Source: Bugula neritina (taxonomy: Eukaryota > Animalia > Bryozoa). Taken from it: a DNA stretch of 64,000 nucleotides. The notes under the pieces are model-generated. The model did not search any database. It saw only the letters and a list, made by a program, of their open reading frames with translations, and was not told where the DNA came from. The stretch lies in assembly GCA_964035545.1 (NCBI GenBank), contig OZ037766.1, positions 12,142,722 to 12,206,721 of the forward strand. The letters run 5' to 3'. The first letter of the stretch is position 1. The number at the start of each line of letters is the position of its first letter. This document shows positions 2,659 to 49,500 of the stretch, one piece after another. The position numbers were made by a program, and so were the translations under genes.

Positions 2659-2694
2659 CTTACTCCCTGACTAGGGGCATTTGTATTAAGTGAG

Positions 2695-2712
2695 ATCCCA
2701 CCGCTGCCACCA
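2695..2712 (-). promoter_or_regulatory. Primer-binding site complementary to the tRNA-Leu 3' end
   Basis: Minus strand TGGTGGCAGCGGTGGGAT, 1 nt after the LTR-terminal CA. The plus strand ATCCCACCGCTGCCACCA matches the known 3' end of metazoan tRNA-Leu(AAG/UAG) plus CCA. Confidence 0.88.
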
Positions 2713-2713
2713 G

Positions 2714-10457: not shown

Positions 10458-10513
10458 ACAAAATGGCCAACAGAGTACACGATATGGGAATGGACAGAGC
10501 ACAAGGCTCAAGG
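10458..10513 (+). CDS. First coding exon, MANRVHDMGMDRAQGSR (ATG at 10463)
   Basis: tttcag acceptor, AAAATGG start context, AGG|gtatgt phase-0 donor. The peptide resembles the transgelin/calponin N-terminus (MANRGP.YG..R). Confidence 0.85.
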
Positions 10514-22500: not shown

Positions 22501-25500
22501 AAATTGTTGCTCTGTGAATGAGGTCTGTTATGGTTATATGTATGCGAATAATTTTTAACGTCTTTTTTTATAACAGAATAGCTAAAATCAGAAATGGCTT
22601 TGAAATTAGACTCACACTATAAAAATCAAAGCTATTTATGATTTCGGTCAACTAAAGTAGAAAAAACTATCAATAGGGGGACCAAAAGCTACAAAGTGTA
22701 TATAGAATTTTGGTTTTTGTACTTCAACCGGAATAAAAATAGTAAAGTATCTAAAAACATGTTTTGAGTATTAATAAAGGAACGCCATAGGCTCTAGATT
22801 TTAAAGCTACTGGAAGCAGAATGGAAATAAAAGCATGCTGTGGCGTTGCAACTATTTTATTTACCTCTACAGGTACTGGAGAACATGCATCTCTGAATGG
22901 AATGAATATTGGTAGTATTAGACATGCTTCTGATATTAGAGCTGAAAATGTTACTCCGCAATCTCAAGGAATACTAACTGAACAAACAGGTATACAATTT
23001 CGCTGAATGTTTTTTTATTTTGGCTTAGTTTTTCAATTAAAGGTGTTATTTTCTCAATTCATTCAATTTCTAGCCATTCAACATACTTTCATAGGTACTG
23101 GAGAACATGCATCTCTGAATGGAATGAATATTGGTAGTATTAGACATGCTTCTGATATTAAAACTGAAAATGTAACTCCACAATCTCAAGGAATACTCAC
23201 TGAGCAAACAGGTGTGTAATTTTGCTGTATGTCCTTTTAATTACATTTACTTGTTCAATTCAAGCTTTTAATTCTTTTAATTTATTCAAAATGCAATCAT
23301 TGAATATGCTTCGATAGGCACTGGAGAACATGCATCTCTGAATGGAATGAATATTGGTAGTATTAGACATGCTTCTGATATTAGAACTGAGAATGTTACT
23401 CCACAATCTCAAGGAATACTAACTGAACAAACAGGTATATAATTTTGTTGTATTTCATTTTATTTTAGTTTAGTCATTCAAATAAAGCTGTTAATTAACT
23501 TAATTTATTCAAAATGCAATCATTGAATATACTTCGATAGGTACTGGAGAACATGCATCTCTGAATGGAATGAATATTGGTAGTATTAGACATGCTTCTG
23601 ATATTAGAACTGAGAATGTAACTCCACAATCTCAAGGGATACTAACTGAGCAGACAGGTGTGTACTTTTGCTGTATGTCCTTTTAATTACATTTAGTTGT
23701 TCAATTCAAGCTTTTAATTCTTTTAATTTATTCAAAATGCAACCATTGAATATACCTTTCTAGGTACTGGAGGACATGCATCTCTGAATGGAATGAATAT
23801 TGGTAGTATTAGACATGCTTCTGATATTAAAACTGAGAATGTTACTCCACAATCTCAAGGAATACTCACTGAGCAAACAGGTGTGTAATTTTTTCTGTAT
23901 GAAAAAATATTTTGGTTTTATTTTATTCGATTAAAACTGTTTATTCGTTTATTTTATTTATAATGCAACCATTTAATATATTTTTATAGGTACTGGAGGA
24001 CATGCATCTCTGAATGGAATGAATATTGGCAGTATTAGACATGCTTCTGATATTAAAACTGAGAATGTTACTCCGCAATCTCAAGGAATACTAACTGAAC
24101 AAACAGGTATAATTTTTTCTGTATGGAAAAATATTTTGGTTTTATTTTACTCGATTAAAACTCTTTATTAGTTTATTTTTCTTATAATGCATTGATTTGA
24201 TCACTTTTTTATAGGTACTGGAGGACATGCATCTCTGAATGGAATGAATATTGGCAGTATTAGACATGCTTCTGATATTAAAACTGAGAATGTTACTCCG
24301 CAATCTCAAGGAATACTAACTGAACAAACAGGTATAATTTTTTCTGTATGGAAAAATATTTTGGTTTTATTTTACTCGATTAAAACTCTTTATTAGTTTA
24401 TTTTTCTTATAATGCATTGATTTGATCACTTTTTTATAGGTACTGGAGAACGTGCATCTCTGAATGGAATGAATATTGGTAGTATTAGACATGCTTCTGA
24501 TATTAAAACTGATGATGTTACTCCACAATCTCAAGGAATACTCACTGAGCAAACAGGTAACTGCATATTTTAAGATTGCTGGTTTCAGTCATGTATAAAT
24601 GTAATTTCCTTGAATACTCACTGAACAAACAGGTATAATTTTGCTGAATGTTTTTTTATTTTGGCTTAGTTCTTCAATTAAAGGTGTTATTTTCTCAATT
24701 CATTCAATTTCTAGCCATTCAACATACTTTTCTAGGTACTGGAGGACATGCATCTCTGAATGGAATGAATATTGGTAGTATTAGACATGCTTCTGATATT
24801 AGAGCTGAGAATGTTACTCCACAATCTCAAGGAATACTAACTGAACAAACAGGTATAATTTTTTCTGTATGGAAAAATATTTTGGTTTTATTTTACTCGA
24901 TTAAAACTCTTTATTAGTTTATTTTTCTTATAATGCATTGATTTGATCACTTTTTTATAGGTACTGGAGAACGTGCATCTCTGAATGGAATGAATATTGG
25001 TAGTATTAGACATGCTTCTGATATTAAAACTGATGATGTTACTCCACAATCTCAAGGAATACTCACTGAGCAAACAGGTAACTGCATATTTTAAGATTGC
25101 TGGTTTCAGTCATGTATAAATGTAATTTCCTTGAATACTCACTGAACAAACAGGTATAATTTTGCTGAATGTTTTTTTATTTTGGCTTAGTTCTTCAATT
25201 AAAGGTGTTATTTTCTCAATTCATTCAATTTCTAGCCATTCAACATACTTTTATAGGTACTGGAGGACATGCATCTCTGAATGGAATGAATATTGGCAGT
25301 ATTAGACATGCTTCTGATATTAAAACTGAGAATGTTACTCCGCAATCTCAAGGAATACTCACTGAGCAAACAGGTATTACTTTGCTGCATGTCTTTTTAT
25401 TTCGGCTTAGTTTTTCAATTAAAGGTGTTATTTTCTCAATTCATTCAATTTCTAGCCATTCAACATACTTTCATAGGTACTGGAGAACATGCATCTCTGA

Positions 25501-28500
25501 ATGGAATGAACATTGGTAGTATTAGACATGCTTCTGATATTAGAACTGAAAATGTAACTCCACAATCTCAAGGAATACTCACTGAGCAAACAGGTGTGTA
25601 ATTTTGCTGTATGTCCTTTTAATTACATTTACTTGTTCAATTCAAGCTTTTAATTCATTTAATTTATCCAAAATGCAACCATTTAATATACTTTTATAGG
25701 TACTGGAGAACATGCATCTCTGAATGGAATGAATATTGGTAGTATTAGACATGCTTCTGATATTAGAACTGAAAATGTTACTCCACAATCTCAAGGAATA
25801 CTCACTGAACAAACAGGTATAATTTTTTCTGTATGAAAAAATATTTTGGTTTTATTTTACTCGATTAAAACTCTTTATTAGTTTATTTTTCTTATAATGC
25901 ATTGATTTGATCACTTTTTTATAGGTACTGGAGAACGTGCATCTCTGAATGGAATGAATATTGGTAGTATTCGACATGCTTCTGATATTAAAACCGAGAA
26001 TGTTACTCCACGGTCTCAAGGAATACTTACTGAGCAAACAGGTAACTGCATATTTTGAGATTGCTGGTTTCAGTCATGTATAAATGTAATTTCCTGGAAT
26101 ACTTACTGAACAAACAGGTATAATTTTGCTGAATGTTTTTTTATTTTGGCTTAGTTTTTCAATTAAAGGTGTTATTTTCTCAATTCATTCAATTTCTAGC
26201 CATTCAACATACTTTCATAGGTACTGGAGAACATGCATCTCTGAATGGAATGAATATTGGTAGTATTAGACATGCTTCTGATATTAGAACTGAGAATGTT
26301 ACTCCACAATCTCAAGGAATACTCACTGAGCAGACAGGTGAATGCACATGTTATGATTGTTGGTTTCAATTTTATTTTTGCATACATTTCTTTTGATATA
26401 GTTGTTTATTTAAAACTAATAATTCGATTAAGTTATTTGAAATGCAGCCATTTAATATTAGTCTAGAGGTAACTTCCCAATGATGCTCGTAAAATTACAT
26501 TATTGCACTTTAATAGTCGACCACTGAAATTGTTCTTTTTCTCGATTCAAATTTTGTATTGATTCTGAATTTACAAGCTCTAGACTCCTATATTTACCAA
26601 ATTTAAGAAAAAAGGTGCATGCATTTGATAAGTGATTCAACTACGAGCGAATATTGTGCAAATTAGCATCCATCAATAATTAGCTGTCTATAAACAACAA
26701 AATCTGGTGAGATACCAAAATTGGTTGTTTCTTCTTTAAAGTTTTACACTGATTCTGATTTCATAAATTGCAAAATGCTCTTTTTATTCAAAACCTTGTT
26801 GTCAACAGAAACACATGTTTGCTGTATAAATGACGCATTACATATGGCAGAAGCATACGTGTAATAAGTAACTGAAAGAAGCCAGTTATGTATGATTAAA
26901 AGCTTTTTATGGTCAAAAAACATATCATGCATGCGTGTTGAAATCTTTTGAGCGTCGACCAAACGAATCTCCTGTTGATCTTTCAGTGATCATCAAATAT
27001 CTGCAAAACATGAACAAGATTCTGTAAATGTATTTTAAAATCACAAATTCTTCATGGGGATGATTAAAACATGCAATGTAAACTTTCTCGTGTCCAGCAA
27101 ATTACATGAAAATTATTTCTAAGTGGTGCTTTATTGTATAAAGTTTTCTAACCATCATTGCTATACATCCATCAATATCATTTGCCTCTTTTTCTCCAAA
27201 GGATCTTTTGTTTAGACAATCTTTGCATGGACATACAGCAGTGCATTGCATTGAAGACTTCTGACATTTACATCAGGATGTCTTGCAACTGGTTTTACAG
27301 CAGCAGTATATACAAGTACTTTTCAATGCATTCTCAGGCGCAATGGTTTGAGTCAATCAATTTATAGTCATGCTGCCATTCCCAACAATATTATCCTAAT
27401 ATTCTGGAGATAGTGTTGATAAAGGCAATTGTTGCCCTTCTCTAGATGGCTGCCTGGTAGCTTTTCTTACGCGCATTATAAGTTCATTTTTTTGGGGAAA
27501 GCTGCAAAATCCATTGAACCATCTTAGTTGGAAAACAGAATACAGCGCATCAAGCATCATCTATGCTTATTTACAAAAGTCCTTTTATTTAAGTTATTGC
27601 AGTTGTGACTTGAAGTACTTTCCAAGCTGTTCAAAGCTTTCAGCACGTTCTGAATGTTTTTCTCAATGAGGAGTAGAATGTGCACTTTCCTTTTTTATAC
27701 AAGTGCTAATGAAATCACAGCCTGCTAGAGTATGAAAGCCAGGGAGTGTTGCACACAACTCATATCCATGTTCATTTGCAGCAAAATTGGTATCTAAATA
27801 TCTCATGTTGCCATCAGGTTCTGTGAATGAATGTACATTTTCAAATAGTAATATATTGCAAATTTCGAGACTCAAGATAAAGACATCAATGTCTTGTGAC
27901 TTTATTATTCTACACTGATACACAATATTTTGCTTGTAAGATCATGTGTGTATGCATGTGTCTCATCATGATCTGAATTTAAACATTTGACTTTGGTTTT
28001 CTTATGAACTCTGCCATGTTTTGAAAATTCTAGCTAAATGCAGTTTTCTTTGAATGCAACAACTTTAAAAATCTAGCCATTTTCACCCTATTTTTTGCAC
28101 AAAATATGCATCTGAAATTTTTCTTGTTGCTAATTGCCAGGAAATTGCAAAAGTTGGCGAGAAATTTTTTATTTGAACAGCTGTTCCATGACCACGTATT
28201 ATAGCATGCTTTGATCTATCCATATACTTGAAATTGGTTTCTGAATGAGTCACAGAAAAAATCCATCCTGCAGGTAGAATAGATATAGGTTTTCACAATA
28301 ACTTTTTAAGGAGTAAATCACTATGGAAACCAAATGCAGGGGCAGTTTTCAGTTCTTGAAATTCTGTCATTTTATCAAAGATAATAGTGCAGTTTTAGAC
28401 GTGATGAATGTTTGAAACGTAGTACTCTGTGCTCAATTCTTTTCCAATAGCATTCATGAGAGCACATTTAGGTTCATAAAATTATTATATATAATATAAA

Positions 28501-31500
28501 ATTAATTTAAGATTTTGATTAAGTGTTAAAAGCCTACCAGAACCAGACTCTAAAAAGATCTGACAGTACAGAACGATTTTAATGGAATTCGAAATGGGTA
28601 ATCATGATTTTGCGAGTTATTTTTATCATCAGTTGACTACTTATAGCAATGCTGTATGCGTTTGATGGGGAAATTTTTGTTGGACTTATAGCATCATCAT
28701 TATCATCTAAGCTTCTTCCTTACTTTCTGATGTGATAGCAAAAATATTGCCTAAAATGCGATAGGAAATAATTTCATAACGCCAATACATGCCTATAGGT
28801 AACCCTTAGTTTAAATGTGTTAAGTCTGTGATAATAAACCTGCTCAGACTTAGGATGATACCTGGTGTTAGTGTTTCTGGTTTACTCAATCAGTCTAAAA
28901 CATCTTGTCTTAGTTTTCTAGTAAGAAATTATTCTCTATTGTAACACAGAGCACGGATAGAAGAAGTACTGGCCTAGGATCGTTGAATAGGGCACCACCA
29001 GATCTTTTTTCTATAATGGGTGATTTAAATATAATTACATTATATATTTTCAATTGTAGCAAAGCTTTTGGGCCTTTCCTCTGTAACTATAACTGAGGTA
29101 ACAAAGTTTTGACTCGGAAATTATTATAAGAATAGTATAAAAAATAGGTGTTTTAATCAACAGCTTTCTCATGCTTCTCGTTACTGTTTTTTGTAAAAGT
29201 ATCGACAATATTTAAAATCATTAGCTTTAATTATTTAAATATTTTCAACAAATTTAGACAAAGTTAGGGGAAAACAACTTCCTCATAAGTTTGAAGAGCT
29301 TTTGTGGCTAACTGGGTGCACAGCGCAATCTAGAATTTTCACAGATTAATTAGGACCTTTCAAACTCTCAATTTTTAAAAAAAATTGTGTAGACCACCCA
29401 CCCCCCCCCTGAAGTGTAGAAAGTGAAAGATAATGGGATGTTAAACTTCTAGACTATATCATTTTATAGGTACTGGAGAACATGCATCTCTGAATGGAAT
29501 GAATATCGGTAGTATTAGACATGCTTCTGATATTAAAACTGAGAATGTTACTCCACAATCTCAAGGAATACTAACTGAACAAACAGGTAACATTTTTTCT
29601 GTATGAAAGAAGTTTTGGTTTATTTTATTTGATTAAAACTGTTTATTCGTTTATTCTATTTAGAATGCAACGATTTGATATATTTTTATAGGTACTGGAG
29701 AACATGCATCTCTGAATGGAATGAATATTGGTAGTATAAGACATGCTTCTGATATTAAAACTGAGAATGTTACTCCACAATCTCAAGGAATACTGACTGA
29801 ACAAACAGGTATTATTTTGCTGCATGTGTTTTTATTTGCTTAGTTTTTCAGTTAAAACTGTTATTCAATTTATTTAAAATGCAACCACTTAACATACTTT
29901 CAATTAAAGCTTTTAATCATTTAATTTATTTGAAATGAAACCATTGGATATAATTTTATAGGTACTGGAGAACATGCATCTCTGAATGGAATGAATATTG
30001 GTAGTATTAGACATGCTTCTGATATTAAAGCTGAGAATGTTACTCCACAATCTCAAGGAATACTCACTGAACAAACAGGTACAATTTTTTTGTATGAAAA
30101 AATATTTTGGTTTTATTTTCTCCGATTGAAACTGTTTATTCGTTTATTTTATTTATAATGCAACGATTTGATATATTTTTATAGGTACTGGAGGACATGC
30201 ATCTCTGAATGGAATGAATATTGGTAGTATTAGACATGCTTCTGATATTAGAACTGAGAATGTTACTCCACAATCTCAAGGAATACTCACTGAACAAACA
30301 GGTATAACTTTGCTGTATGGAAAATATTTCGGTTTCATTTTACTCTATTTAAACTGATTATTCATTAATTTTTTTACAATGCATTAATTTATTATATTTT
30401 TATAGGCACTGGAGAACACGCATCTCTGAATGGAATGAATATTGGTAGTATTAGACATGCTTCTGATATTAGAACTGAGAATGTTACTCCACAATCTCAA
30501 GGAATACTAACTGAACAAACAGGTGAATGAATATGTTAAGATGGTTGGTTTCGATAAGGTGTTATAAATGTTATTTTTCAGTCAAGATATGGGTCATTTT
30601 ACTTGATTTAGTGCACACTATATCTCTAGTTTATTACTATTTTCACACTTTAGCTGCTAATGCAAATGATTTTTCACCTCAAACTATTGAAATATCAACA
30701 AATGGAACTCAGTAATCAAGGTCATTAATTTTGCTTGATTTTCTATGCCTGTTACTAATTTGCAATCCGGACGGTGATGGAAGAATGATCATGGTCTGCA
30801 CATATATACTTAGCTCATATGACAATAACGTTGCGCTTCAACATTGCAGAACCCCCTCCCAGCTTTTTTGCTATGCATAATTCGAATCAACACATACAAT
30901 TTTCAATATAGTGAATTATCATGAATTTTGAACAAATTTTTAATTTCTGGTGCTGGTTTGCTGATGTGTACTTAATAAATTGAAATGACGTTTTTGGGAA
31001 TGCTCGCGTCTTTCTACAGGTACAGGTGGTCACGCTTCCCAGAAAGGAATGAATATGGGTTACACTTGGCATGCTGGTGATCATCCTTTAGACAAATTGT
31101 CTCAAGAATCTCAAGGAATTCTACACCATCAAACTGGTACTGGTGAACATGCTTCCCAAAAAGGAATGTCGATTGGTAAAGTGAGAATGGCAGCTGACAC
31201 TCCCACTGATGAAATGGCAATGGAATCTCAAGGTGTTCTCCACTCTCAAACTGGCACTGGGGAACATGCTTCTCAAAAAGGCATGAATATGGGCTATACT
31301 TGGCATGCTGGTGACCATCCCTTAGACAAATTGTCTCAAGAATCACAAGGAATTCTACACCATCAAACTGGTACTGGAGAACATGCATCTCTGAATAGAA
31401 TGAATATTGGTAGTATTAGACATGCTTCTGATATTAGAACTGAGAATGTAACTCCACAATCTCAAGGAATACTAACTGAACAAACAGGTACAATTTTGCT

Positions 31501-34500
31501 GTATGTCCTTTCATTTTGGCTTCCTTATTTCATTACAACAGTTATTTTTTCATTTCATTTAAAATGAAACTATTATTATACATTGATAGGTACTGGAGAG
31601 CACGCATCTCTGAATGGAATGACTATTGGTAGTATTAGACATGCTTCTGATATTAAAACTGAGAATGTTACTCCACAATCTCAAGGAATGCTAACTGAAC
31701 AAACAGGTATTACTTTGCTGCATGTCTTTTTATTTGCTTAGTTTTTCAGTAAAAACTATTATTTAATTTATTTAAAATGCAACCATTTTACATACTTTCA
31801 ATTAAAGCTTTTAATTATTTAATTTATTTGAATTGAGACCATTTTATATTCTTTCATAGGTACTGGAGAACATGCATCTCTGAATGGAATGAATATTGGT
31901 AGTATTAGACATGCTTCTGATATTAGAACTGAGAATGTTACTCCACAATCTCAAGGAATACTCACTGAACAAACAGGTATAGTTTTGCTGTATGGAAAAT
32001 ATTTTGGTTTCATTTTACTCGATTAAGACTGATTATTCATTTATTTCATTTATAATGCAATAATTTAATGTATTTTTATAGGTACTGGAGAACATGCATC
32101 TCTGAATGGAATGAATATTGGTAGTATCAGACATGCTTCTGATATTAAAACTGAGAATGTAACTCCACAATCTCAAGGAATACTAACTGAACAAACAGGT
32201 GTGTAGTTTTGTTGTATGCCCTTTTATTTTGGTTTAGTTTTTCAATTTAAAGTTTTAAGGATTTTATTTATTTAAAATGCAACTATTTATTATAATTTTG
32301 TAGGTACTGGAGAACATGCATCTCTGAATGGAATGAATATTGGTAGTATTAGACATGCTTCTGATATTAGAACTGAGAATGTTACTCCACAATCTCAAGG
32401 AATACTAACTGAACAAACAGGTATTACTTTGCTGCATGTCTTTCTATTTGCTTAGTTCTTTTAGTAAAAACTATTATTTACTTTATTTAAAATGCAACCA
32501 TTTAACATACTTTCAATTAAAGCTTTTAATTATTTAATTTATTTGAATTGAGACCATTTCATATTCTTTCATAGGTACTGGAGAACATGCATCTCTGAAA
32601 GGAATGAATATTGGTAGTATAAGACATGCTTCTGATATTAAAACTGAGAATGTTACTCCACAATCTCAAGGAATACTCACTGAACAAACAGGTATAGTTT
32701 TGCTGTATGGAAAATATTTTGGTTTCATTTTACTCGATTAAGACTGATCATTCATTTATTTTATTTATAATGCAATAATTTAATGTAATTTTATAGGTAC
32801 TGGAGAACATGCATCTCTGAATGGAATGAATATTGGTAGTATTAGACATGCTTCTGATATTAGAACTGAGAATGTTACTCCACAATCTCAAGGAATACTC
32901 ACCGAGCAAACAGGTACAATTTTGCTCCATGTCCTTTTATTTTAGCTTGGTTATTCAATTAAAACTGGTAATTCATTTAATTTATTTAAAATGAAACCAT
33001 TTAACATACTTTTCTAGGTACTGGAGAACATGCATCTCTGAATGGCATGAATATTGGTAGTATTAGACATGCTTCTGATATTAAAACTGAGAATGTTACT
33101 CCACAATCTCAAGGAATACTAACTGAACAAACAGGTAACATTTTTTCTGTATGAAAGAAGTTTTGGTTTATTTTATTTGATTAAAACTGTTTATTCGTTT
33201 ATTCTATTTAGAATGCAACGATTTGATATATTTTTATAGGTACTGGAGAACATGCATCTCTGAATGGAATGAATATTGGTAGTATAAGACATGCTTCTGA
33301 TATTAAAACTGAGAATGTTACTCCACAATCTCAAGGAATACTAACTGAACAAACAGGTATAACTTTGCTAAGTGTAGGATTGTTGGTTTCAATCATGTAT
33401 AAATCTATTTTTCCAGTCAAAATGTATTCATGCTCATGTTTTTCTACAGGTACAGGTGGTCACGCTTCCCAGAAAGGCATGAATATGGGTTACACTTGGC
33501 ATGCTGGTGATTATCCCTTAGACAAATTGTCTCAAGAATCACAAGGAATTCTACACCATCAAACTGGTACTGGAGAGCACGCATCTCTGAATGGAATGAA
33601 TATTGGTAGTATTAGACATGCTTCTGATATTAAAACTGAGAATGTTACTCCACAATCTCAAGGAATACTAACTGAACAAACAGGTGTGTAATTTTGCTGC
33701 ATGTCTTTCTATTTGCTTAGTTCTTTTAGTAAAAACTATTATTTACTTTATTTAAAATGCAACCATTTAACATACTTTCAATTAAAGCTTTTAATTATTT
33801 AATTTATTTGAATTGAGACCATTTCATATTCTTTCATAGGTACTGGAGAACATGCATCTCTGAATGGAATGAATATTGGTAGTATTAGACATGCTTCTGA
33901 TATTAGAACTGAGAATGTTACTCCACAATCTCAAGGGATACTAACTGAACAAACAGGTATAATTTTTTTTGTATGAAAAAATATTTTGGTTTTATTTTAT
34001 TCAATTTAAACTGATTATTCATTATTTTTTGTACAATGCAATAATTTAGTATATTTTTATAGGTACTGGAGAACACGCATCTCTGAATGGAATGAATATT
34101 GGTAGTATTAGACATGCTTCTGATATTAAAACTGAGAATGTCACTCCACAGTCTCAAGGAATACTCACTGAACAAACAGGTATAATTTATTTTGTATGAA
34201 AGATATTTTGGTTTTATTTTATTCAATTTAAACTGATTATTCATTATTTTTTGTACAATGCAATAATTTAGTATATTTTTATAGGTACTGGAGAACACGC
34301 ATCTCTGAATGGAATGAATATTGGTAGTATTAGACATGCTTCTGATATTAAAACTGAGAATGTCACTCCACAGTCTCAAGGAATACTCACTGAACAAACA
34401 GGTATAATTTATTTTGTATGAAAGATATTTTGGTTTTATTTTATTCAATTTAAACTGATTATTCATTATTCTTTTTACAATGCAACAATTTAGTATATTT

Positions 34501-37500
34501 TTATAGGTACTGGAGAACATGCATCTCTGAATGGAATGAATATTGGTAGTATTAGACATGCTTCTGATATTAGAACTGAGAATGTTACTCCACAATCTCA
34601 AGGAATACTCACTGAACAAACAGGTACAATTTTGCTCTATGTCCTTTTATTTTAGCTTGGTTATTCAATTAAAACTGGTAATTCATTTAATTTATTTAAA
34701 ATGAAACCATTTAACATACTTTTCTAGGTACTGGAGAACATGCATCTCTGAATGGAATGAATATTGGTAGTATTCGACATGCTTCTGATATTAAAACTGA
34801 GAATGTAACTCCACAGTCTCAAGGAATACTAACTGAACAAACAGGTATAACTTTGCTAAGTGTAGGATTGTTGGTTTCAATCATGTATAAATCTATTTTT
34901 CCAGTCAAAATGTATTCATGCTCATGTTTTTCTACAGGTACAGGTGGTCACGCTTCCCAGAAAGGCATGAATATGGGTTACACTTGGCATGCTGGTGATC
35001 ATCCCTTAGACAAATTGTCTCAAGAATCACAAGGAGTTCTACACCATCAAACTGGTACTGGAGAACATGCATCTCTGAATGGAATGAATATTGGTAGTAT
35101 TAGACATGCTTCTGATATTAGAACTGAGAATGTAACTCCACAATCTCAAGGAATACTAACTGAACAAACAGGTGTGTAATTTTGCTGCATGTCTTTCTAT
35201 TTGCTTAGTTCTTTTAGTAAAAACTATTATTTACTTTATTTAAAATGCAACCATTTAACATACTTTCAATTAAAGCTTTTAATTATTTAATTTATTTGAA
35301 TTGAGACCATTTCATATTCTTTCATAGGTACTGGAGAACATGCATCTCTGAATGGAATGAATATTGGTAGTATTAGACATGCTTCTGATATTAGAACTGA
35401 GAATGTTACTCCACAATCTCAAGGGATACTAACTGAACAAACAGGTAACATTTTTTTTGTATGAAAAAATATTTTGGTTTTATTTTATTCAATTTAAACT
35501 GATTATTCATTATTTTTTGTACAATGCAATAATTTAGTATATTTTTATAGGTACTGGAGAACACGCATCTCTGAATGGAATGAATATTGGTAGTATTAGA
35601 CATGCTTCTGATATTAAAACTGAGAATGTCACTCCACAGTCTCAAGGAATACTCACTGAACAAACAGGTATAATTTATTTTGTATGAAAGATATTTTGGT
35701 TTTATTTTATTCAATTTAAACTGATTATTCATTATTCTTTTTACAATGCAACAATTTAGTATATTTTTATAGGTACTGGAGAACATGCATCTCTGAATGG
35801 AATGAATATTGGTAGTATTAGACATGCTTCTAATATTAGAACTGAGAATGTTACTCCACAATCTCAAGGAATACTCACCGAGCAAACAGGTACAATTTTG
35901 CTCTATGTCCTTTTATTTTAGCTTGGTTATTCAATTAAAACTGGTAATTCATTTAATTTATTTAAAATGAAACCATTTAACATACTTTAATAGGTACTGG
36001 AGGACATGCATCTCTGAATGGCATGAATATTGGTAGTATTCGACATGCTTCTGATATTAAAACTGAGAATGTAACTCCACAGTCTCAAGGAATACTAACT
36101 GAACAAACAGGTGAATGAATATGTTTAGATTGTTGGTTTCAATAATGAACAACGTATTATAAATGTCTTTATTCGGTTAAGATACCGGTCATTTCACTTA
36201 ATTTAGTGCACACTATATCTCTAGTTTCTAACTATTTTCACACTTTAACTGCTAGTGCATATGATTTTTCACCTTAAACTATTGAAATATCAACAAATGG
36301 AACTCAATCATCAAGGTCATTATTTTTGCTTGATTTTCTATGCCTGTTACTAATTTCTTAACGAACTAGGATATATGGACTGTGATGAAAAAACGATCAC
36401 GGCCCGCAGATATATACTTAGCTCATATGACAATAACGTTGCGCTTCAACATTGCAGAACCCCCTCCCAGCTTTTTTGCTATGCATAATTCGAATCAACA
36501 CATACAATTTCCGATATAGTGAATTCTCATGAATTTTGAACAAACATTAAATTTTGGTTCTGGTTTGCTGATGTGTACTTAATAAATTGAAATGACCTTT
36601 TTGTGAATGCTCGCGTCTTTCTACAGGTACAGGTGGTCACGCTTCCCAGAAAGGAATGAATATGGGTTACACTTGGCATGCTGGTGATCTTCCTTTAGAC
36701 AAACTGTCTCAAGAATCACAAGGAGTTCTACACCATCAAACTGGTACTGGAGAACATGCATCTCTGAATGGAATGAATATTGGTAGTATTAGACATGCTT
36801 CTGATATTAAAACTGAGAATGTTACTCCACAATCTCAAGGAATGCTAACTGAACAAACAGGTATTACTTTGCTGCATGTCTTTTTATTTGCTTAGTTTTT
36901 CAGTAAAAACTGTTATTTAATTTATATAAAATGCAACCATTTTACATACTTTCAATTAAAGCTTTTAATTATTTAATTTATTTGAATTGAAACCATTTTA
37001 TATTCTTTCATAGGTACTGGAGAACATGCATCTCTGAATGGAATGAATATTGGTAGTATTAGACATGCTTCTGATATTAGAACTGAGAATGTAACTCCAC
37101 AATCTCAAGGAATACTCACTGAACAAACAGGTGAATGCCCATGTTAAGACAGTTGGCCTCTATTTAAGCTGTATGTGTACGTCTTTGGTGTATTAATGTT
37201 GTAATGTCAATTAAAGTCCATGTCTTGCTATACCTAATAGCTATAATTAGTAGACCTCTTTCAATCACTCATTTCACCATTATGCGTCTGTCTCGACCCC
37301 ACTGAACTAACTTAATAAGTGTATCTTGACGGAATACTTTTCATTGCCCACAGCAACTTAGATTTTCTCAGAATTGTCAAATTTGTGAGTTTCTCAACAT
37401 TAGGTGCAACTTCAGGGTTTTTGGCAATTTGAATTAGATGATGATAGCAGTTGTCTCACTACAATTGCTACTCCATTTGGCTGATATGGATTTTTGAGGC

Positions 37501-40500
37501 TAACCTTCAACATAAGTTTGGCATCTGAAATAGTTCATAGAAAGTAAGCAAATTATTATCAGATGTAGTCAGAGTTGAGACTTTCGTAGATTATTTATTG
37601 ATACATGTTCTTACAAAGGTAGCCATTTTCAAATGACGTTCTGCGTAAAATGCTTGGGAGATGCGAGAAAGTTATCTTGAAGCTTAACTTAGCGAAATGT
37701 AGTTTTGAGAAGTCTGAACATAGGTATTTAGATCACATAATTGGACAGGGTGTCATCACAGCCGACCCAATTATGATTAAATCTACAGTCGGCATGTCTG
37801 TGCTACAGAATGTGTTAGGATAGCCGCAGCTAAACTCATACTCAAGTAAGGCTACATATATTCCTCAAGGTTTTGTAGGAGGGATGGAAGTTTAGGTTAG
37901 AATGAGACATAGGAATTGGCTATGAGGAACAGTTAAGCTGAAAGTTTCATAATTAGGCTTTATGATTGTAGAATTTTTAGATGGTAAGCAATCTTGTTCG
38001 AAAATTTGAAAATTTCCATTACATCTAAGTTCTGGGTTAGAGGGAATTACACCACCCACCAACCTAGTTCATGTTACTAGAGTGAGTAACTCTGTTTCGC
38101 ATAGTACACCCAATTCAAGTTCTGTTCAGGGAATAGACAGGCGCAGTGTTCCTAATGGGCATAGCACAGTTACTTGAGTAGGTAGGGTTTCAGAGCCTCA
38201 CGCCAGATTTGGTCAGAATCTGTACGATGCCAAAACTTAGTTGACTTAAGTAAATGTACCATTGGAAGAATGTTTAGTAGTGCACATATATATTATGTTA
38301 TATAACTTTGCTTTAATCTTCAACTACATGCTTTTGTAACTTTTTATACAATTAAATATTGTTACTGAGTCACTAAGTCTTCGTTTTTGACTGCGGATAG
38401 GATGTTATAATGTCAACTACAGTTCATGTCTTGCCATACCTAATAGCTGTAGTGAGTATATCTATATGTGAATCATGCATTCCCTTATTATTGTCAGAGT
38501 CAGCATCTATATAAATATTTGTCTCTAGATTTCATAGTGTTATCATCATTTATATTATTGGTAATTGCACCTAATAAATCTACAATGTAATTCATTGCAA
38601 GTCAATATCATCTTGTTACATATCATTACACTTCGTAATGCCAACAAGAAACAACAAAATATAACAGTTGATCAATTTGAATTTTTATTTAGTTCAAAAT
38701 TTTAACTATTATACTTTTATAGGTACTGGAGAGCATGCATCTCTGAATGGAATGAATATTGGTAGTATTAGACATGCTTCTGATATTAAAACTGAGAATG
38801 TTACTCCACAATCTCAAGGAATACTAACTGAACAAACAGGTATAACTTTGCTAAATGTAAGATTGTTGCCTTCAATTATGTTTAAATGTATTTTTTCAGT
38901 CAAAATATATTCATGCTCATGTTTTTCTACAGGTACAGGTAGTCATGCATCCCAGAAAGGAATGAATATGGGCTACACTTGGCATGCTGGTGATCATCCT
39001 TTAGACAAATTGTCTCAAGAATCACAAGGAATTCTACACCATCAAACTGGTACTGGAGAACATGCATCTCTGAATGGAATGAATATCGGTAGTATTAGAC
39101 ATGCTTCTGATATTAAAACTGAGAATGTTACTCCACAATCTCAAGGAATACTCACTGAACAAACAGGTACAATTTTGCTGTATGCCCTTTTATTTTGGTT
39201 TAGTTTTTCAGTTTGAAGTTTTAAGGATTTTATTTATTTAAGATGCAACCATTTAATATACTTACATAGGTACTGGAGAACATGCATCTCTGAATGGAAT
39301 GAATATTGGTAGTATAAGACATGCTTCTGATATTAAAACTGAGAATGTTACTCCCCAATCTCAAGGAATACTAACTGAACAAACAGGTGAATGAATATTT
39401 TAAGATTGTTGATTTCAATAACGTATTATAAATGTCTTTATACGGTTAAGATATGGGTCATTTCACTTTATTTAGTGCACACTATATCTCTAGTTTCTAA
39501 CTATTTTCACACTTTAGCTGCTAATGCATATGATTTTTCACTTTAAACTATTGAAATATCAACAAATGGAACTTAATCATCAAGGTCATTAATTTTGCTT
39601 GATTTTCTATGCCTGTTGCTAATTTCTTAACGATTTAGGATATATGGACTGTGATGAAAAAATGATCACGGCCCGCAGATATATACTTAGCTCATATGAT
39701 AATAACGTTGCCCTTCAACATTGCAGAACCTCCTCCCAGGTTTTACGCTATGCATAATTCGAACCAACACATACGATTTCCAATATAGTGAATCTTCATG
39801 AGTTTTGAACAAACGGTAATTTTTGGTTCTGGTTTGCTGATGTTTACTCAATAAATTGAAACGACCTTTTTGTGAAAGCTCGGGTCTTTCTACAGGTACA
39901 GGTGGTCATGCTTCCCAGAAAGGAATGAACATGGGTTACACTTGGCATGCTGGTGATCATCCTTTAGACAAATTGTCTCAAGAATCACAAGGAGTTCTAC
40001 ACCATCAAACTGGTACTGGAGAACATGCATCTCTGAATGGAATGAATATTGGTAGTATAAGACATGCTTCTGATATTAAAACTGAGAATGTTACTCCACA
40101 ATCTCAAGGAATACTCACTGAACAAACAGGTGTGTAGTTTAGCTGTATGCCCTTTTATTTTGGTTTAGTTTTTCAACTGAAAGTTTTAAGGATTTTATTT
40201 ATTTAATTTATTTGAAATGAAACCATTTGACATACTTTCCTAGGTACTGGAGGACATGCATCTCTGAATGGAATGAATATTGGTAGTATTAGACATGCTT
40301 CTGATATTAAAACTGAGAGTGTTACTCCACAATCTCAAGGAATACTAACTGAACAAACAGGTGTGTAGTTTTGCTGTATGCCCTTTAATTTTGGTTTAGT
40401 TTTTCAGTAAAAACTGTTATTTAATTTATTTAAAATGCAACCACTTAACATACTCTCAATTAAAGCTTTTAATTATTAAATTTATTTGAATTGAAATCAT

Positions 40501-43500
40501 TTTATATTTTTTCATAGGTACTGGAGAACATGCATCTCTGAATGGAATGAATATTGGTAGTATTAGACATGCTTCTGACATTAAGACTGAGAATGTTACT
40601 CCACAATCTCAAGGAATACTAACTGAACAAACAGGTATAATTTTGCTGTATGTCCTTTCATTTTTGCTTCCTGATTTCATTACAACAGTTATCTTTTCAT
40701 TTCATTTGAAATGAAACTATTTATTATACTTTGATAGGTACTGGAGAACATGCATCTCTGAATGGAATGAATATTGGTAGTATTAGACATGCTTCTGATA
40801 TTAAAACTGATAATGTTACTCCACAATCTCAAGGAATACTAACTGAACAAACAGGTGTGTAGCTTTGCTGTTTGCCCTTTTATTTTTGTTTAGTTTTTCA
40901 ATTGAAAGTTTTAGGATTTTATTTATTTAAAATGCAAACATTTAACATGCTTTCAATTGAAGCTTTTAATTATTTAATTTATTTGAATTGAAACCATTTT
41001 ATATTCTTTCATAGGTACTGGAGAACATGCATCTCTGAATGGAATGAATATCGGTAGTATTAGACATGCTTCTGATATTAGAACTGAGAATGTTACTCCA
41101 CAATCTCAAGGAATACTAACTGAACAAACAGGTACATATTTTTTCTTCATGTCCTTTTATTTTGGCTTAGTTTTTCAATTAAAGGTGTTACTTTCTCACT
41201 TCTTTCAATTTCTAACCATTCAACATACTTTCGTAGGTACCGGAGAACATGCATCTCTGAATGGAATGAATATTGGCAGTATTAGACATGCTTCAGATAT
41301 TAAAACTGAGAATGTTACTCCACAATCTCAAGGAATACTAACTGAACAAACAGGTATAGTTTTGCTGTATGGAAAATATTTTGCTTTCATTTTACTCGAT
41401 TAAAACTGATTATTCATTTATTTTATTTATAATGCAATAATTTAATGTATTTTTATAGGTACTGGAGAACATGCATCTCTGAATGGAATGAATATTGGTA
41501 GTATTAGACATGCTTCTGATATCAAAACTGAGAATGTTACTCCACAATCTCAAGGAATACTCACTGAGCAAACAGGTGAATGAATATGTTGAAATTGTTG
41601 GTTTCAATAACATGATATAAATGTCTTTTTTCAGTCAAGATATGGGTTATTTTACTTAATTTAGTGCACATTATATCTCTAGTTGATCACTATTTTCACA
41701 CATTAGCTGCTAATGCACATGATTTTTCACCTCAAACTATTGAAATATTACCAAATGGAATTCAATAATCAAGGTCATTAGTTTTGCTTGATTTCCTACG
41801 CCTGTTACTAATTTCTCATTGAATTAGGATATATGGTCTGTGATGAAAAAATGATCATGGCCTGCACATGTATACTTGGCTCATATGACAATAACGTTGC
41901 CCTTCAACATTGCAGAACCCCTTCCCAGCTTTTTTGCTATACATAATTCAAATCAACACATACAATTTCCAATATAGTGAATTCTCATGAATTTTGAACA
42001 AACTTTAAAATTTGGTTCTGGTTTGCTGATGTGTACTTAATAAATTGAAATGACCTTTTTGTGAATGCTCGCGTCTTTCTACAGGTACAGGAGAACATGC
42101 ATCTCTGAATGGATTGAATATTGGTAGTATTAGACATGCTTCTGATATTAAAACTGAGAATGTAACTCCACAATCTCAAGGAATACTCACTGAACAAACA
42201 GGTGTGTAATTTTGCTGTGTGTCCTTTCATTTTGGCTTCCTTATTTCATTACAACAGTTATCTTTTCATTTCATTTAAAATGAAACTATTTATTATACTT
42301 TGATAGGTACTGGAGAACATGCATCTCTGAATGGAATGAATATTGGTGGTATTAGACATGCTTCTGATATTAAAACTGAGAATGTCACTCCACAATCTCA
42401 AGGAATACTAACTGAACAAACAGGTATATAATTTTGTTGTATTTTTTTTTATTTTAGTTTAGTCATTCAAATAAAGCTGTTAATTAACTTAATTTATTTA
42501 AAATGCAACTATTTATTATAATTTTGTAGGTACTGGAGAACATGCATCTCTGAATGGAATGAATATTGGTAGTATTAGACATGCTTCTGATATTAAAACT
42601 GAGAATGTTACTCCACAATCTCAAGGAATACTTACTGAACAAACAGGTATAATTTTGCTTTATGGAAAATATTTTGGCTTTATTTTATTCTATTTAAACT
42701 GTTTATTCATTAATTTTTTTATAATGCATTAATTTAATATACTTTTCTAGGTACTGGAGAACATGCATCTCTGAATGGAATGAATATCGGTAGTATTAGA
42801 CATGCTTCTGATATTAAAACTGAGAATGTAACTCCACAATCTCAAGGAATACTAACTGAACAAACAGGTATAACTTTGCTGCATGTCTTTTTATTTCCTT
42901 AGTTTTTCAGTAAAAACTTTTATTTAATTTATATAAAATGCAACCGTTTTACATACTTTCAATTAAAGCTTTTAATTATTTAATTTATTTGAATTGAAAC
43001 CATTTTATATTCTATCATAGGTTCCGGAGAACATGCATCTCTGAATGGAATGAATATCGGTAGTATTAGACATGCTTCTGATATTAAAACTGAGAATGTT
43101 ACTCCACAATCTCAAGGAATACTAACTGAACAAACAGGTATTTAATTTTGTTGTATTTTATTTTATTTTAGTTTAGTCATTCAAATAAAGCTGTTAATTA
43201 ACTTAATTTATTTAAAATGCAACTATTTATTATAATTTTGTAGGTACTGGAGAACATGCATCTCTGAATGGAATGAATATTGGTAGTATAAGACATGCTT
43301 CTGATATTAAAACTGAAAATGTTACTCCACAATCTCAAGGAATACTAACTGAACAAACAGGTATAACTTTGCTAAGTGTAGGATTGTTGGTTTCAATCAT
43401 GTATAAATTTATTTTTCCAGTCAAAATGTATTCATGCTCATGTTTTTCTACAGGTACAGGTGGTCACGCTTCCCAGAAAGGCATGAATATGGGTTACACT

Positions 43501-46500
43501 TGGCATGCTGGTGATCATCCCTTAGACAAATTGTCTCAAGAATCACAAGGAATTCTACACCATCAAACTGGTACTGGAGAGCATGCATCTCTGAATGGAA
43601 TGAATATTGGTAGTATTAGACATGCTTCTGATATTAAAACTGAGAATGTTACTCCACAATCTCAAGGAATACTAACTGAACAAACAGGTATAATTTTGCT
43701 GTGTGTCCTTTCATTTTGGCTTCGTTATTTCATTACAACAGTTATTTTTTCATTTCATTTAAAATGAACCTATTTATTATACTTCGATAGGTACTGGAGA
43801 ACATGCATCTCTGAATGGAATGAATATTGGTAGTATTAGACATGCTTCTGATATTAGAACTGAGAATGTTACTCCACAATCTCAAGGAATACTAACTGAA
43901 CAAACAGGTGAATGAATATGTCAAGATGGTTGGTTTCAATATCGTGTTATAAATGTCTTTTTCAGTCAAGATTTGGGTCATTTTACTTAATTTAGTGCAC
44001 ACTATATCTCTAGTTTCTAAGTATTTTCACACTTTCACTGCTAATGCATATGATTTTTTACCTTAAACTATTGAAATATCAACAAATGGAACTCAAACAT
44101 CAAGGTCATTAGTTTTGCTTGATTTCCTACGCCTGTTACTAATTTCTCATTGAATTAGGATATATGGTCTGTGATGAAAAAATGATCATGGCCTGCACAT
44201 GTATACTTGGCTCATATGACAATAACGTTGCCCTTCAACATTGCAGAACCCCCTCCCAGCTTTTTTGCTATGCATAATTCGAATCAACACATACAATTTC
44301 CAATATAGTGAATTCTCATGAATTTTGAACAAACTTTAAATTTTGGTTCTGGTTTGCTGATGTGTACTTAATAAATTGAAATGACCTTTTTGTGAATGCT
44401 CGCGTCTTCCTACAGGTACAGGTGGTCATGCTTCCCAGAAAGGCATGAATATGGGTTACACTTGGCATGCTGGTGATCATCCCTTAGACAAATTGTCTCA
44501 AGAATCACAAGGAATTCTACACCATCAAACTGGTACTGGAGAACATGCATCTCTGAATGGAATGAATATTGGTAGTATAAGACATGCTTCTGATATTAAA
44601 ACTGAGAATGTAACTCCACAATCTCAAGGAATACTAACTGAACAAACAGGTGTGTAGCTTTGCTGTGTGCCCTTTTATTTTTGTTTAGTTTTTCAATTGA
44701 AAGTTTTGGGATTTTATTTATTTAAAATGCAACCATTTAACATGCTTTCAATTAAAGCTTTTAATTATTTAATTTATTTGAATTGAAACCATTTTATATT
44801 CTTTCATAGGTACTGGAGAACATGCATCTCTGAAAGGAATGAATATTGGTAGTATTAGACATGCTTCTGATATTAGAACTGAGAGTGTTACTCCTCAATC
44901 TCAAGGAATACTTACTGAGCAAACAGGTAACTGCATATTTTAAGATTGTTGGTTCCAGTCATGTATAAATGTAATTTCCTGGAATACTCACTGAACAAGC
45001 AGGTATAATTACGCTGTATGGAAGAGATTTTGGTTTCATTTTACTCGATTAAAACTGTTTATTCATCTATTTTATTTATAATGCAATAATTTAATGTATT
45101 TTTATAGGTACTGGAGAACATGCATCTCTGAATGGAATGAATATTGGTAGTATTAGACATGCTTCTGATATTAAAACTGAGAATGTTACTCCACAATCTC
45201 AAGGAATACTAACTGAACAAACAGGTATAACTTTGCTAAGTGTAGGATTGTTGGTTTCAATCATGTAGAAATCTACTTTTCCATTCAAAATGTTTTCATG
45301 CTCATGTTTTTCTACAGGTACAGGTGGTCACGCTTCCCAGAAAAGCATGAATATGGGTTACACTTGGCATGCTGGTGATCATCCCTTAGACAAATTGTCT
45401 CAAGAATCACAAGGAATTCTACACCATCAAACTGGTACTGGAGAGCACGCATCTCTGAATGGAATGAATATTGGTAGTATAAGACATGCTTCTGATATTA
45501 AAACTGAGAATGTTACTCCACAATCTCACGGAATACTCACTGAACAAACAGGTGAATGCCCATGTTAAGACAGTTGGCCTCTATTTAAGCTGTATGTGTA
45601 CGTCTTTGGTGTATTAATGTTGTAATGTCAATTAAAGTCCATGTCTTGCTATACCTAATAGCTATAATTAGTAGACCTCTTTCAATCACTCATTTCACCA
45701 TTATGCGTCTGTCTCGACCCCACTGAACTAACTTAATAAGTGTATCTTGACGGAATACTTTTCATTGCCCACAGCAACTTAGATTTTCTCAGAATTGTCA
45801 AATTTGTGAGTTTCTCAACGTTAGGTGCAACTTCAGGGTTTTTGGCAATTTGAATTAGATGATGATAGCAGTTGTCTCACTACAATTGCTACTCCATTTG
45901 GCTGATATGGATTTTTGAGGCTAACCTTCGACATAAGTTTGGCATCTGAAATAGTTCATAGAAAGTAAGCAAATTATTATCAGATGTAGTCAGAGTTGAG
46001 ACTTTCGTAGATTATTTATTGATACATGTTCTTACAAAGGTAGCCATTTTCAAATGACGTTCTGCGTAAAATGCTTGGGAGATGCGAGAAAGTTATCTTG
46101 AAGCTTAACTTAGCGAAATGTAGTTTTGAGAAGTCTGAACATAGGTATTTAGATCACATAATTGGACAGGGTGTCATCACAGCCGACCCAATTATGATTA
46201 AATCTACAGTCGGCATGTCTGTGCTACAGAATGTGTTAGGATAGCCGCAGCTAAACTCATACTCAAGTAAGGCTACATATATTCCTCAAGGTTTTGTAGG
46301 AGGGATGGAAGTTTAGGTTAGAATGAGACATAGGAATTGGCTATGAGGAACAGTTAAGCTGAAAGTTTCATAATTAGGCTTTATGATTGTAGAATTTTTA
46401 GATGGTAAGCAATCTTGTTCGAAAATTTGAAAATATCCATTACATCTAAGTTCTGGGGTAGAGGGAATTACACCACCCACCAACCTAGTTCATGTTACTA

Positions 46501-49500
46501 GAGTGAGTAACTCTGTTTCGCATAGTACACCCAATTCAAGTTCTGTTCAGGGAATAGACAGGCGCAGCGTTCCTAATGGGCATAGAACAGTTACTTGAGT
46601 AGGTAGGGTTTCAGAGCCTCACACCAGATTTTGTCAGAATCTGTACTATGCCAAAACTTAGTTGACTTAAGTAAATGTACCATCGGAAGAATGTTTAGTA
46701 GTGCACATATATATTATGTTATATAACTTTGCTTTATCTTTCAACTACATGCTTTTGTAACTTTTTATACAATTAAATATTGTTACTGAGTCACTAAGTC
46801 TTCATTTTTGACTGCGGATAAGATGTTATAATGTCAACTACAGTTCATGTCTTGCCATACCTAATAGCTGTAGTGAGTATATATCTATATGTGAATCGTG
46901 CATTCTCTTACTATTGTCAGAGTCAGCATCTATGTACAATATTTGTCTCTAGATTTCATAGTGTTATCATCATTTATATTATTGGTAATTGCACCTAATA
47001 AATCTACAATGTAATTCATTGCAAGTCAACATCATCTTGTTACATATCATTACACTTCATAATGCCAACAAGAAACAAAAACATATAACAGTTGATCAAT
47101 TTGAATTTTTATTTAATTCAAAATTGTAACTATTATACTTCTATAGGTACTGGAGAACATGCATCTCTGAATGGAATGAATATTGGTAGTATTAGACATG
47201 CTTCAGATATTAAAACTGGAAATGTTACTCCACAATCTCAAGGAATACTAACTGAACAAACAGATATTACTTTACTGCATGTCTTTTTATTTGCTTAATT
47301 TTTCAGTAAAAACTGTTATTTAACTTAATTAAAATGCAACCATTTAACATATTTTCAATTAAAGCTTTTAACTATTTAATTTATTTGAATTGAACTTATT
47401 TTATATTATTTCATAGGTACTGGAGAACATGCATCTCTGAATGGAATGAATATTGGTAGTATTAGACATGCTTCTGATATTAGAACTGAGAGTGTTACTC
47501 CACAATCTCAAGGAATACTAACTGAACAAACAGGTATAACTTAGCTAAATGTAAGATTGTTGGTTTCAATCATGTATAAATGTATTTTTTCCAGTCAAAA
47601 TATATTCATGCTCATGTCTTTCTACAGGTACAGGTGGTCACGCTTCCCAGAAAGGAATGAATATGGGTTACACTTGGCATGCTGGTGATCATCCCTTAGA
47701 CAAATTGTCTCAAGAATCACAAGGAATTCTACACCATCAAACTGGTACTGGAGAGCATGCATCTCTGAATGGAATGAATATTGGTAGTATAAGACATGCT
47801 TCTGATATTAAAACTGAGAATGTTACTCCACAATCTCAAGGAATACTAACTGAACAAACAGGTATAGTTTTGCTGTATGGAAAATACTTCGGTTTCATTT
47901 TACTCTATTTAAACTGATTATTCATTAATTTTTTTATAATGCATTATTTTATTATATTTTTATAGGTACTGGAGAACATGCATCTCTGAATGGAATGAAT
48001 ATTGGTAGTATTAGACATGCTTCTGATATTAAAACTGAGAATGTTACTCCACAATCTCAAGGAATACTCACTGAGCAAACAGGTATAACTTAGCTAAATG
48101 TAAGATTGTTGGTTTCAATCATGTATAAATCTATTTTTCCAGTCAAAATATATTCATGCTCGCGTTTTTCTACAGGTACAGGTGGTCACGCCTCCCGGAA
48201 AGGAATGAATATGGGTTACACTTGGCATGCTGGTGATCATCCCTTAGACAAACTGTCTCAAGAATCACAAGGAGTTCTACATCATCAAACTGGTACTGGA
48301 GAACATGCATCTCTGAATGGAATGAATATTGGTAGTATAAGACATGCTTCTGATATTAAAACTGAGAATGTTACTCCACAATCTCAAGGAATACTAACTG
48401 AACAAACAGGTGAAATAATAATTGGTTTATTTTGTAGTTGTTTGTTGTTGATTAACTTGGACTTGTTTTTTCGGCGGACATCCTCTCACTTTTCCTTTTG
48501 TTTTACATTACTTTTAACAAACAGTCTAAGTTCATGATTTTGCATCCTGCACACTACGTTGTGGCACTACTTCTTAGCTTTTATCATACAATAACCTAAA
48601 GGAGCTTAAATCTTTGCTTTTTAATAATTAACTCACTGACATAGAGTCAATTTTCTGTCTGCAAGTGTTTTGGCACAATATTCCCGGGTAGGAAGTTGAA
48701 ACTAGAGTCATTCATCTTGTAAATTGTTCTCTCTCTTTAGTAAGCTGAAACATGATTTACTAGACATCAACAGTAAGGAACAGAAAATAAATAAAACTGA
48801 GTTAGCACAAACAAATAACAGAAACTCATGATTTGGTTTGTCATTGTAACTATTTAACATCTCAGTTATTGGTACCGACGATGCTTCAAAAAGTAAACAG
48901 TAGCAACAAAGTGGTAGGCGAGCATTCATAAGTTGTCTTTCCTTAATTTATCCTTCAACAATTTGCATATTTGAAATGGGTCCTCTCATATGACATCAGG
49001 ACATATGAGGTGTGGCTGTGCATTACCAATTTTTTTAGAAGGCTGTTTCAAGGCTCTCAGTAAAGTCATGAGCTCTATGCCGCTGCCTTGCTTTAAGGTA
49101 TTCATTGGTGTAGCTAAGTTTTCCTTTTTTGTTTCCCTGTTTTTTACGTATGTAATTTTGCATTATTCCTGAAACATTTGCAGAATGGTTGAATTACAAA
49201 GTTGATCTACATTATCATTTAGTCAAAGACTGAATGTATGTGTGATTTTATATGGCTTTGGCGGAAAAACTTTAATTGTAAAAAAAAACTCTTGAATACA
49301 AAAATTGGTGGGCCCAGTTGTAATGAATATGGTGAAAATGATTATTGGGGGAAGTTGTACATGATTCAAAGGGCTTCAACTAGCCCCAACACTGTCACGG
49401 TACAAATTATTGGCATTGTCTGCTGTGAATGAGATATCTATGCAACTTTAAGTTATTGGCCAGCTTTGAAACCATGTTTGCGACACTTGGCTGAGTTCAC

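What the first reader, a model, noticed from the sequence alone, without database searches (positions are those of the whole stretch)
22873..48409. About 69 interchangeable phase-1 cassette exons: a possible splice-tunable length module
Seen: every exon is a multiple of 117 nt, starts and ends in phase 1 within the same Gly codon, and (with one exception) keeps AG/GT signals, while the introns are visibly diverged. Any subset can therefore be skipped without frameshift. Inference: unlike Dscam-type arrays, the cassettes are almost identical, so splicing would vary repeat number (spacer length or avidity between the CH head and the giant exon) rather than specificity. The range is 0 to about 82 repeats.
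Basis: partly seen in the sequence, partly recalled or inferred. Interest (0 to 1): 0.85.

Follow-up and report, generated by a model that had tools for sequence, protein, structure and literature searches.

The report
Exon array of bryozoan giant calponin
The 69 near-identical exons are real, selected coding exons in the middle of an apparently undescribed calponin gene of the moss animal Bugula neritina with about 240 repeats (about 1 MDa, against 3-8 repeats in other calponins found), but nothing yet shows that cells skip these exons to tune protein length.

Summary
Observation confirmed: 69 exons (58x117, 10x234, 1x468 nt; 82 repeats of 39 aa), all phase 1, one with a dead donor. They belong to a Bugula neritina calponin gene with about 241 calponin-type (CLIK) repeats (9,400 aa), 135 of them in one 15.8-kb exon. 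The exons are under purifying selection (pN/pS 0.14). Relatives in four other sample sets carry large multi-repeat exons. One has its own homogenised small-exon array in the same position; two have none there. The splicing inference is unproven. Phase-1 symmetry is shared by every repeat exon of this gene and of its paralogue, so duplication alone explains it. Introns are short, and a relative's transcript-like contig keeps all nine symmetric 3' exons. Array repeats have lost core CLIK residues, which argues against simple avidity tuning. Best reading: germline expansion under concerted evolution, included largely as a block in a giant isoform, as in bivalve calponins. Graded, titin-PEVK-like skipping stays possible (about 30%). 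The notable result is the megadalton calponin itself. The scan earlier noted the giant exon on this window and an LRR cassette array elsewhere in this genome.

The parts
10463..10513 (+). first coding exon of the calponin gene (17 aa, starts MANRVHD)
   Evidence: 59-65% identical to calponin N-termini; conserved in relatives L028/L029
12284..15760 (+). about nine candidate low-complexity exons between exon 1 and the CH domain; four are a 434-bp exon+intron tandem duplication; boundaries approximate
   Evidence: the first is conserved in L028/L029; absent from other calponins, where exon 1 and CH1 are contiguous
16322..18670 (+). four exons of the calponin-homology domain and linker (16322-16452, 16856-16958, 18195-18332, 18553-18670)
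   Evidence: sequence; 44-64% identity exon by exon to mollusc and flatworm calponins
19392..20918 (+). three 234-nt phase-1 exons with six canonical CLIK repeats
   Evidence: Pfam PF00402 72-75 bits for the two exons scanned; profile score 117, equal to the reference mean
21254..21373 (+). 120-nt phase-1 exon with one diverged 40-aa repeat; weak acceptor
   Evidence: sequence; a similar 40-aa single exon lies at the same place in L028/L029
22873..48409 (+). array of 69 phase-1 exons, 82 degenerate CLIK-like repeats (69 A, 12 B, 1 C; 3,198 aa)
31020..31487 (+). 468-nt chimeric exon (units B-C-B-A) linking the array to the giant-exon sequence
   Evidence: PF00402 25 bits, over the cut-off
47147..47263 (+). 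array exon 65 with donor AT instead of GT; it lies in a 1.8-kb block duplicated at 97.8% whose sister exon (38723) keeps GT
26400..29400 (.). dispersed repeat (transposon-like) inside array intron 15
   Evidence: 89 genomic matches at 65-84% identity
49884..64000 (+). giant exon, 135 alternating B/C repeats, 15,795 nt, open throughout; ends 1,678 nt past the window. Beyond it: an 8-repeat exon, nine single-repeat exons, non-CLIK tail exons and two canonical terminal CLIK exons
   Evidence: the same tract is in an independent assembly, L018

Best explanation
The array is the newest, lineage-specific expansion within a giant calponin gene of bryozoans. SHOWN: the gene has a CH domain, 6 canonical CLIK repeats, about 235 further 39-aa repeats and a low-complexity tail. 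The array grew by tandem duplication and reshuffling of exon+intron units of an ancestral layout with phase-1 introns at the repeat-boundary Gly. Its exons are homogenised within each species and held by purifying selection. INFERRED: the array is spliced in largely as a block, with few or occasional skips, in a giant isoform of about 1.1 MDa. A short 9-repeat calponin would come from the same gene by skipping the whole insert and using the canonical terminal exons, much as bivalve calponins choose between sets of repeat exons. Array length is then tuned mainly in the germline. INFERRED function: a muscle thin-filament scaffold or tether. It is anchored on F-actin by the canonical repeats near its ends, and the degenerate, acidic, His-rich middle repeats keep the 39-aa register and bind weakly and polyvalently along the filament (nebulin-like; 241 x 5.5 nm is about 1.3 micrometres if one repeat meets one subunit, geometry from my own knowledge).
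For: Selection: pN/pS 0.136, 30 synonymous vs 18 non-synonymous alleles, p=9e-9; second species 29 vs 15, p=3e-10. Concerted evolution or parallel expansion: array units cluster by species (100/99 support), 96% and 92% identity within, 78% between, and no intron similarity between species. Block duplications of 1-2 kb at 83-98%. Phase-1 symmetry in all other repeat exons and in the paralogue on C1. L034 and L028/L029 have no such array after the canonical exons. Intronless contig L037 holds all nine 3' single-exon repeats in order and ends in the non-CLIK tail, not in the canonical terminal exons. Pinctada splicing isoforms 1-3 share 143 residues, then use separate sets of 4, 3 and 5 repeats. 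CLIK repeats bind actin and affinity rises with number (PMC4436780).
Against: No RNA read from the array itself was seen. No short isoform from a bryozoan was found among the homologues. Exon 65 cannot use its donor, so at least one skip must be tolerated if that base is real. Titin and nebulin, the closest analogues, do vary repeat number by splicing. Actin binding by A, B and C repeats is untested, and their profile scores (21, 7, 35) lie below every reference repeat (minimum 63). L037 comes from another species, has a probable 1-nt assembly slip, and is judged RNA only because it lacks introns.
Confidence: 0.58

Rival explanations
1. One reading: individual array exons or runs of them are skipped in a regulated way, giving isoforms with a graded number of repeats that tune the length or compliance of a disordered spring.
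For: All exons are skippable in frame. The exon with a dead donor is retained. Small exons persist in two species next to a giant exon that shows introns are not needed. Non-consensus donors such as GTATAA and GTGTGT. Titin PEVK has about 74-109 exons with length isoforms (PMC6469411). No confident fold for four repeats, mean pLDDT 44.
Against: Symmetry is ancestral and required by duplication. Median intron is 106 nt, and skipping is enriched in exons flanked by long introns (PMC6142364). Non-consensus donors also occur in the nine 3' exons whose orthologues L037 includes. No conserved intronic element between the two arrays. Near-identical exons leave little handle for exon-specific regulation (inference).
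Confidence: 0.3
2. Mutually exclusive use (Dscam-like): only one or a few array exons are chosen per mRNA.
For: Tandem array of homologous internal exons.
Against: No flank k-mer is complementary to more array introns than in shuffled controls. Introns of 93 nt or more give no obvious steric block (inference). Joined exons keep the frame, so decay cannot enforce exclusivity. The cassettes are nearly the same peptide.
Confidence: 0.05
3. The array is a non-coding, always skipped satellite, or an assembly artefact.
For: High copy identity; four exon 3'-end remnants and a transposon-like insert lie inside the array.
Against: pN/pS 0.14 and intact splice sites. 60 distinct units in mosaic introns. 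The first two array exons also appear in an independent sample (L017), and a homologous array exists in a second species.
Confidence: 0.04

Closest known systems
Lophotrochozoan calponins (e.g. Pinctada fucata splicing isoforms BBL87042-4; Mizuhopecten, Magallana)
   Same: N-terminal CH domain, CLIK repeats mostly at 39-40 aa spacing; the canonical repeats of this gene match their profile; alternative repeat sets by splicing.
   Different: 3-7 repeats there against about 241 here; degenerate A/B/C repeats, a 15.8-kb exon, a homogenised exon array and low-complexity inserts.
C. elegans UNC-87 (CLIK-only actin and myosin binder)
   Same: Tandem CLIK repeats, apparently unstructured in solution, number correlated with actin stabilisation (PMC4436780).
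   Different: Seven repeats, no CH domain, isoforms differ by promoter and N-terminus, not by repeat number.
Titin PEVK region
   Same: Long run of small duplicated exons in a giant muscle-type gene, with length evolving by exon duplication and loss (PMC6469411).
   Different: No homology; graded splicing is shown for titin and not here; the repeats derive from an actin-binding motif and are not Pro/Glu/Val/Lys-rich.
Nebulin
   Same: Giant (600-900 kDa) chain of short actin-binding repeats whose length varies by splicing (PMC9140763); similar size.
   Different: Unrelated sequence; no 7-repeat super-repeat here (B/C dimers; spacings of 2-8 in the second species); actin binding along the chain is untested.
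Dscam1 cassette arrays
   Same: Tandem arrays of homologous internal exons.
   Different: Cassettes here are nearly identical, no docking/selector signal was found, and joint inclusion keeps the frame.

Membership tests
Calponin family | N-terminal type-3 CH domain | tested here: met
   the four exons match PF00307-bearing calponins at 44-64% in local BLAST; the joined domain was not searched
Calponin family | CLIK repeats (PF00402) after the CH domain | tested here: met
   over the cut-off for canonical exons, the 468-nt exon and the giant exon
Calponin family | array A unit keeps the CLIK core residues | tested here: not met
   NKF replaced by GEH and QK by LN; 21 bits vs reference 117 (minimum 63), yet far above shuffles (mean -175); no Pfam hit for one exon alone
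Calponin family | F-actin binding, actomyosin ATPase inhibition | not testable with these tools
   needs biochemistry
Splice-tuned repeat modules (titin PEVK, nebulin) | array of frame-preserving repeat exons under coding constraint | tested here: met
Splice-tuned repeat modules (titin PEVK, nebulin) | transcripts that differ in the number of array exons | not testable with these tools
Nebulin-like thin-filament ruler | 7-repeat super-repeat | tested here: not met
   2-unit period in Bugula neritina; irregular 2-8 spacing in the second species
Dscam-type mutually exclusive arrays | docking site complementary to a selector before each exon | tested here: not met
   simple exact k-mer test; best counts within the shuffled range
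Dscam-type mutually exclusive arrays | diversified cassettes | tested here: not met
   96% mean nucleotide identity, purifying selection

The most novel reading that the evidence does not exclude
Bryozoans evolved, from calponin, a megadalton filament protein that is an independent analogue of nebulin or titin, and Bugula sets its length for each muscle type by regulated inclusion of 0-82 near-identical repeats.
Probability: 0.22. Interest if true: 0.85.

Novelty: new variant of a known kind. Interest (0 to 1): 0.62.

Why it matters
The calponins with a CH domain retrieved here have at most 7-8 repeats. A gene with about 241, with large multi-repeat exons in several relatives, points to a further independent route to a giant muscle filament protein besides titin and nebulin. 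It offers a natural test of whether tandem CLIK repeats follow the actin helix one subunit at a time, and of how invertebrates without nebulin stabilise thin filaments. The array is also a clear case of exons homogenised more strongly than their introns. No description was found in the papers searched, though that library lacks most subscription journals.

Tried and rejected
The contig is bryozoan, not human. Length-gated protein searches with the A unit and the giant exon returned nothing, although ORFs of about 3,850 aa exist in the collection, so these blanks mean little. No calponin with more than 8 repeat motifs among 262 retrieved proteins; long hits at 19-25% identity were taken as unrelated repeat proteins. 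No relevant solved structure. The AlphaFold model was too weak for a fold search. Docking-site and cross-species intron tests were negative. Pfam hits other than PF00402 were below their cut-offs or had no passing stretch, and were discarded. Searches were a frame slip, corrected. The Pinctada isoform paper itself was not in the library; the claim rests on the deposited sequences.

Full report
Observation. The array is as described. There are 69 exons between 22873 and 48409: 58 of 117 nt, 10 of 234 nt and one of 468 nt, together 82 repeats of 39 aa. All are phase 1 at the Gly codon, with AG acceptors and GT donors, apart from an AT donor after 47263. There is no stop or frameshift. A neutral simulation expects 8-16 damaged splice dinucleotides, against one seen. 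The unit was found only here in the genome.

Organism and gene. The window is G000:C2:12142722-12206721 of a 216-Mb genome. A giant-exon unit is 100% identical to KAF6027298.1 of Bugula neritina, and an older B. neritina assembly holds the same tract and downstream exons. The gene is a calponin. In order it has: exon 1 at 10463; candidate low-complexity insert exons; four CH-domain exons (16322-18670); six canonical CLIK repeats (PF00402); a 120-nt exon; the array; a 15,795-nt exon of 135 alternating B and C repeats; an 8-repeat exon; nine single-repeat exons; non-CLIK tail exons; and two canonical terminal CLIK exons. Summed exon by exon, the repeat region is 241 repeats, 9,400 aa, 997 kDa, of which the array is 34%. 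None of 262 retrieved proteins had more than 8 repeat motifs.

The exons are coding and selected. A units are 96% identical, with pN/pS 0.136 and 30 synonymous against 18 non-synonymous alleles, p=9e-9. This rejects 'always skipped'.

How the array arose. Introns average 69% identity, but most have a 90-100% sibling, they are mosaics of about 14 5' and 10 3' types, and 1-2 kb blocks are duplicated at 83-98%. Exon distance barely follows flanking-intron distance (rho 0.13 and 0.03), and four-fold sites differ by only 0.087, so exons are more homogeneous than introns. The 11 longer exons start with the giant exon's B unit, which shows exchange between the two regions. In another B. neritina sample (L017) a canonical exon is 98% and its intron 89% identical to the window, but the first array intron only 58%. 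That suggests fast turnover, with the caveat that it lies at a contig end.

Relatives. Samples tagged SAMN08714533/SRR6854717 hold, from an unnamed close relative, single-repeat 117-nt phase-1 exons directly before an ORF of about 3,850 aa of diverged repeats. At least 17 distinct units were seen, 92% identical to each other and 78% to the Bugula neritina units. They are under the same constraint (29 vs 15 alleles), cluster by species, and their introns have no similarity to ours. Other orthologous contigs have the same canonical 5' exons. L034/L032 go on to exons of about 27 and at least 41 repeats with no array; L028/L029 have a few small exons and then a multi-repeat exon; L038/L036 show large multi-repeat exons. 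So large repeat expansion is shared across these relatives, which I take to be bryozoans from sequence similarity, while the small-exon array is limited to some lineages. A single ancestral array under concerted evolution and two parallel expansions of one orthologous exon cannot be told apart here.

Is it spliced variably? Not shown. For skipping: frame symmetry, one dead donor, and the precedent of titin PEVK and nebulin (PMC6469411; PMC9140763). Against: every repeat exon of this gene and of the paralogue at C1:268-274 kb is phase-1 symmetric, and the paralogue has its own five tandem two-repeat exons, so symmetry needs no splicing explanation. 60 of 68 introns are under 200 nt, whereas skipping is enriched next to long introns (PMC6142364). 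No docking site was found. L037, an intronless contig from a relative, carries orthologues of all nine symmetric 3' exons in order. L037 continues into the non-CLIK tail and stops there without the canonical terminal exons, so the gene probably has at least two 3' ends. In Pinctada and Mizuhopecten, calponin isoforms share 143 residues and then use different whole sets of 3-7 repeats. Block-wise choice is therefore the documented mode in the nearest relatives with data.

What the repeats may do. On a profile of 169 non-bryozoan repeats, the six 5' and two scored terminal repeats are canonical (117 and 131 bits). A, B and C units score 21, 7 and 35, have lost the NKF motif, and carry a net charge near -2 against +0.5; the array units of both species also lack the Lys of the SQKG motif. 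CLIK repeats bind actin in proportion to number and appear unstructured alone (PMC4436780); AlphaFold gave no confident fold (mean pLDDT 44) and no structure is solved. The 39-aa register, the Gly positions and the G-x-x-R-H-x-x-D motif are kept across hundreds of units and several species, which fits contact with a periodic partner better than a pure spacer. I infer a thin-filament scaffold with strong ends and a weakly binding middle; a disordered spring is the alternative. Muscle location is inferred from the family, not tested.

Verdict. The gene is a calponin by domain content. Its array has the layout of titin PEVK, but the defining feature, transcripts with different exon counts, is untested. 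The stronger result is an apparently undescribed megadalton calponin in bryozoans. New variant of a known kind; interest 0.62.

Noticed in passing
window 1-3050 (- strand): GC-rich LTR-retrotransposon-like fragment with a gag-like ORF (1789-2658) and apparent reverse-transcriptase motifs; read from the sequence only.
   Followed up: no
window 12284-15760: About nine Ser/Arg/Thr/Glu-rich candidate exons between calponin exon 1 and the CH domain, four of them a 434-bp exon+intron tandem duplication; the first is conserved in relatives. Probably a giant-isoform insert.
   Followed up: partly
window 24612, 25133, 26088, 44973: 21-30 nt remnants of the exon 3' end with a GT donor inside 179-181 nt introns, likely scars of unequal crossing-over; they offer decoy donors.
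   Followed up: partly
window 26400-29400: About 2.9-kb dispersed repeat with 89 genomic matches inside array intron 15.
   Followed up: partly
L005:9931 to L006:3060: Non-CLIK tail exons with about ten 13-aa Gln-rich repeats; partly homologous to the Gln/Gly/Thr-rich tail in L037.
   Followed up: partly
G000:C1:268237-274500 (L013/L014, - strand): Paralogous calponin with 18 repeats, including five tandem copies of a two-repeat phase-1 exon: a small version of the same expansion process.
   Followed up: partly
window 49884-64000 and beyond: In the giant exon B units show purifying selection (pN/pS 0.10) but C units do not detectably (0.65, p=0.49); higher-order blocks of about 18 units recur near its 5' end.
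   Followed up: partly
L026:265, 1796, 2507: The second species' array includes a shorter unit type lacking about three residues, recurring among the 117-nt exons.
   Followed up: no
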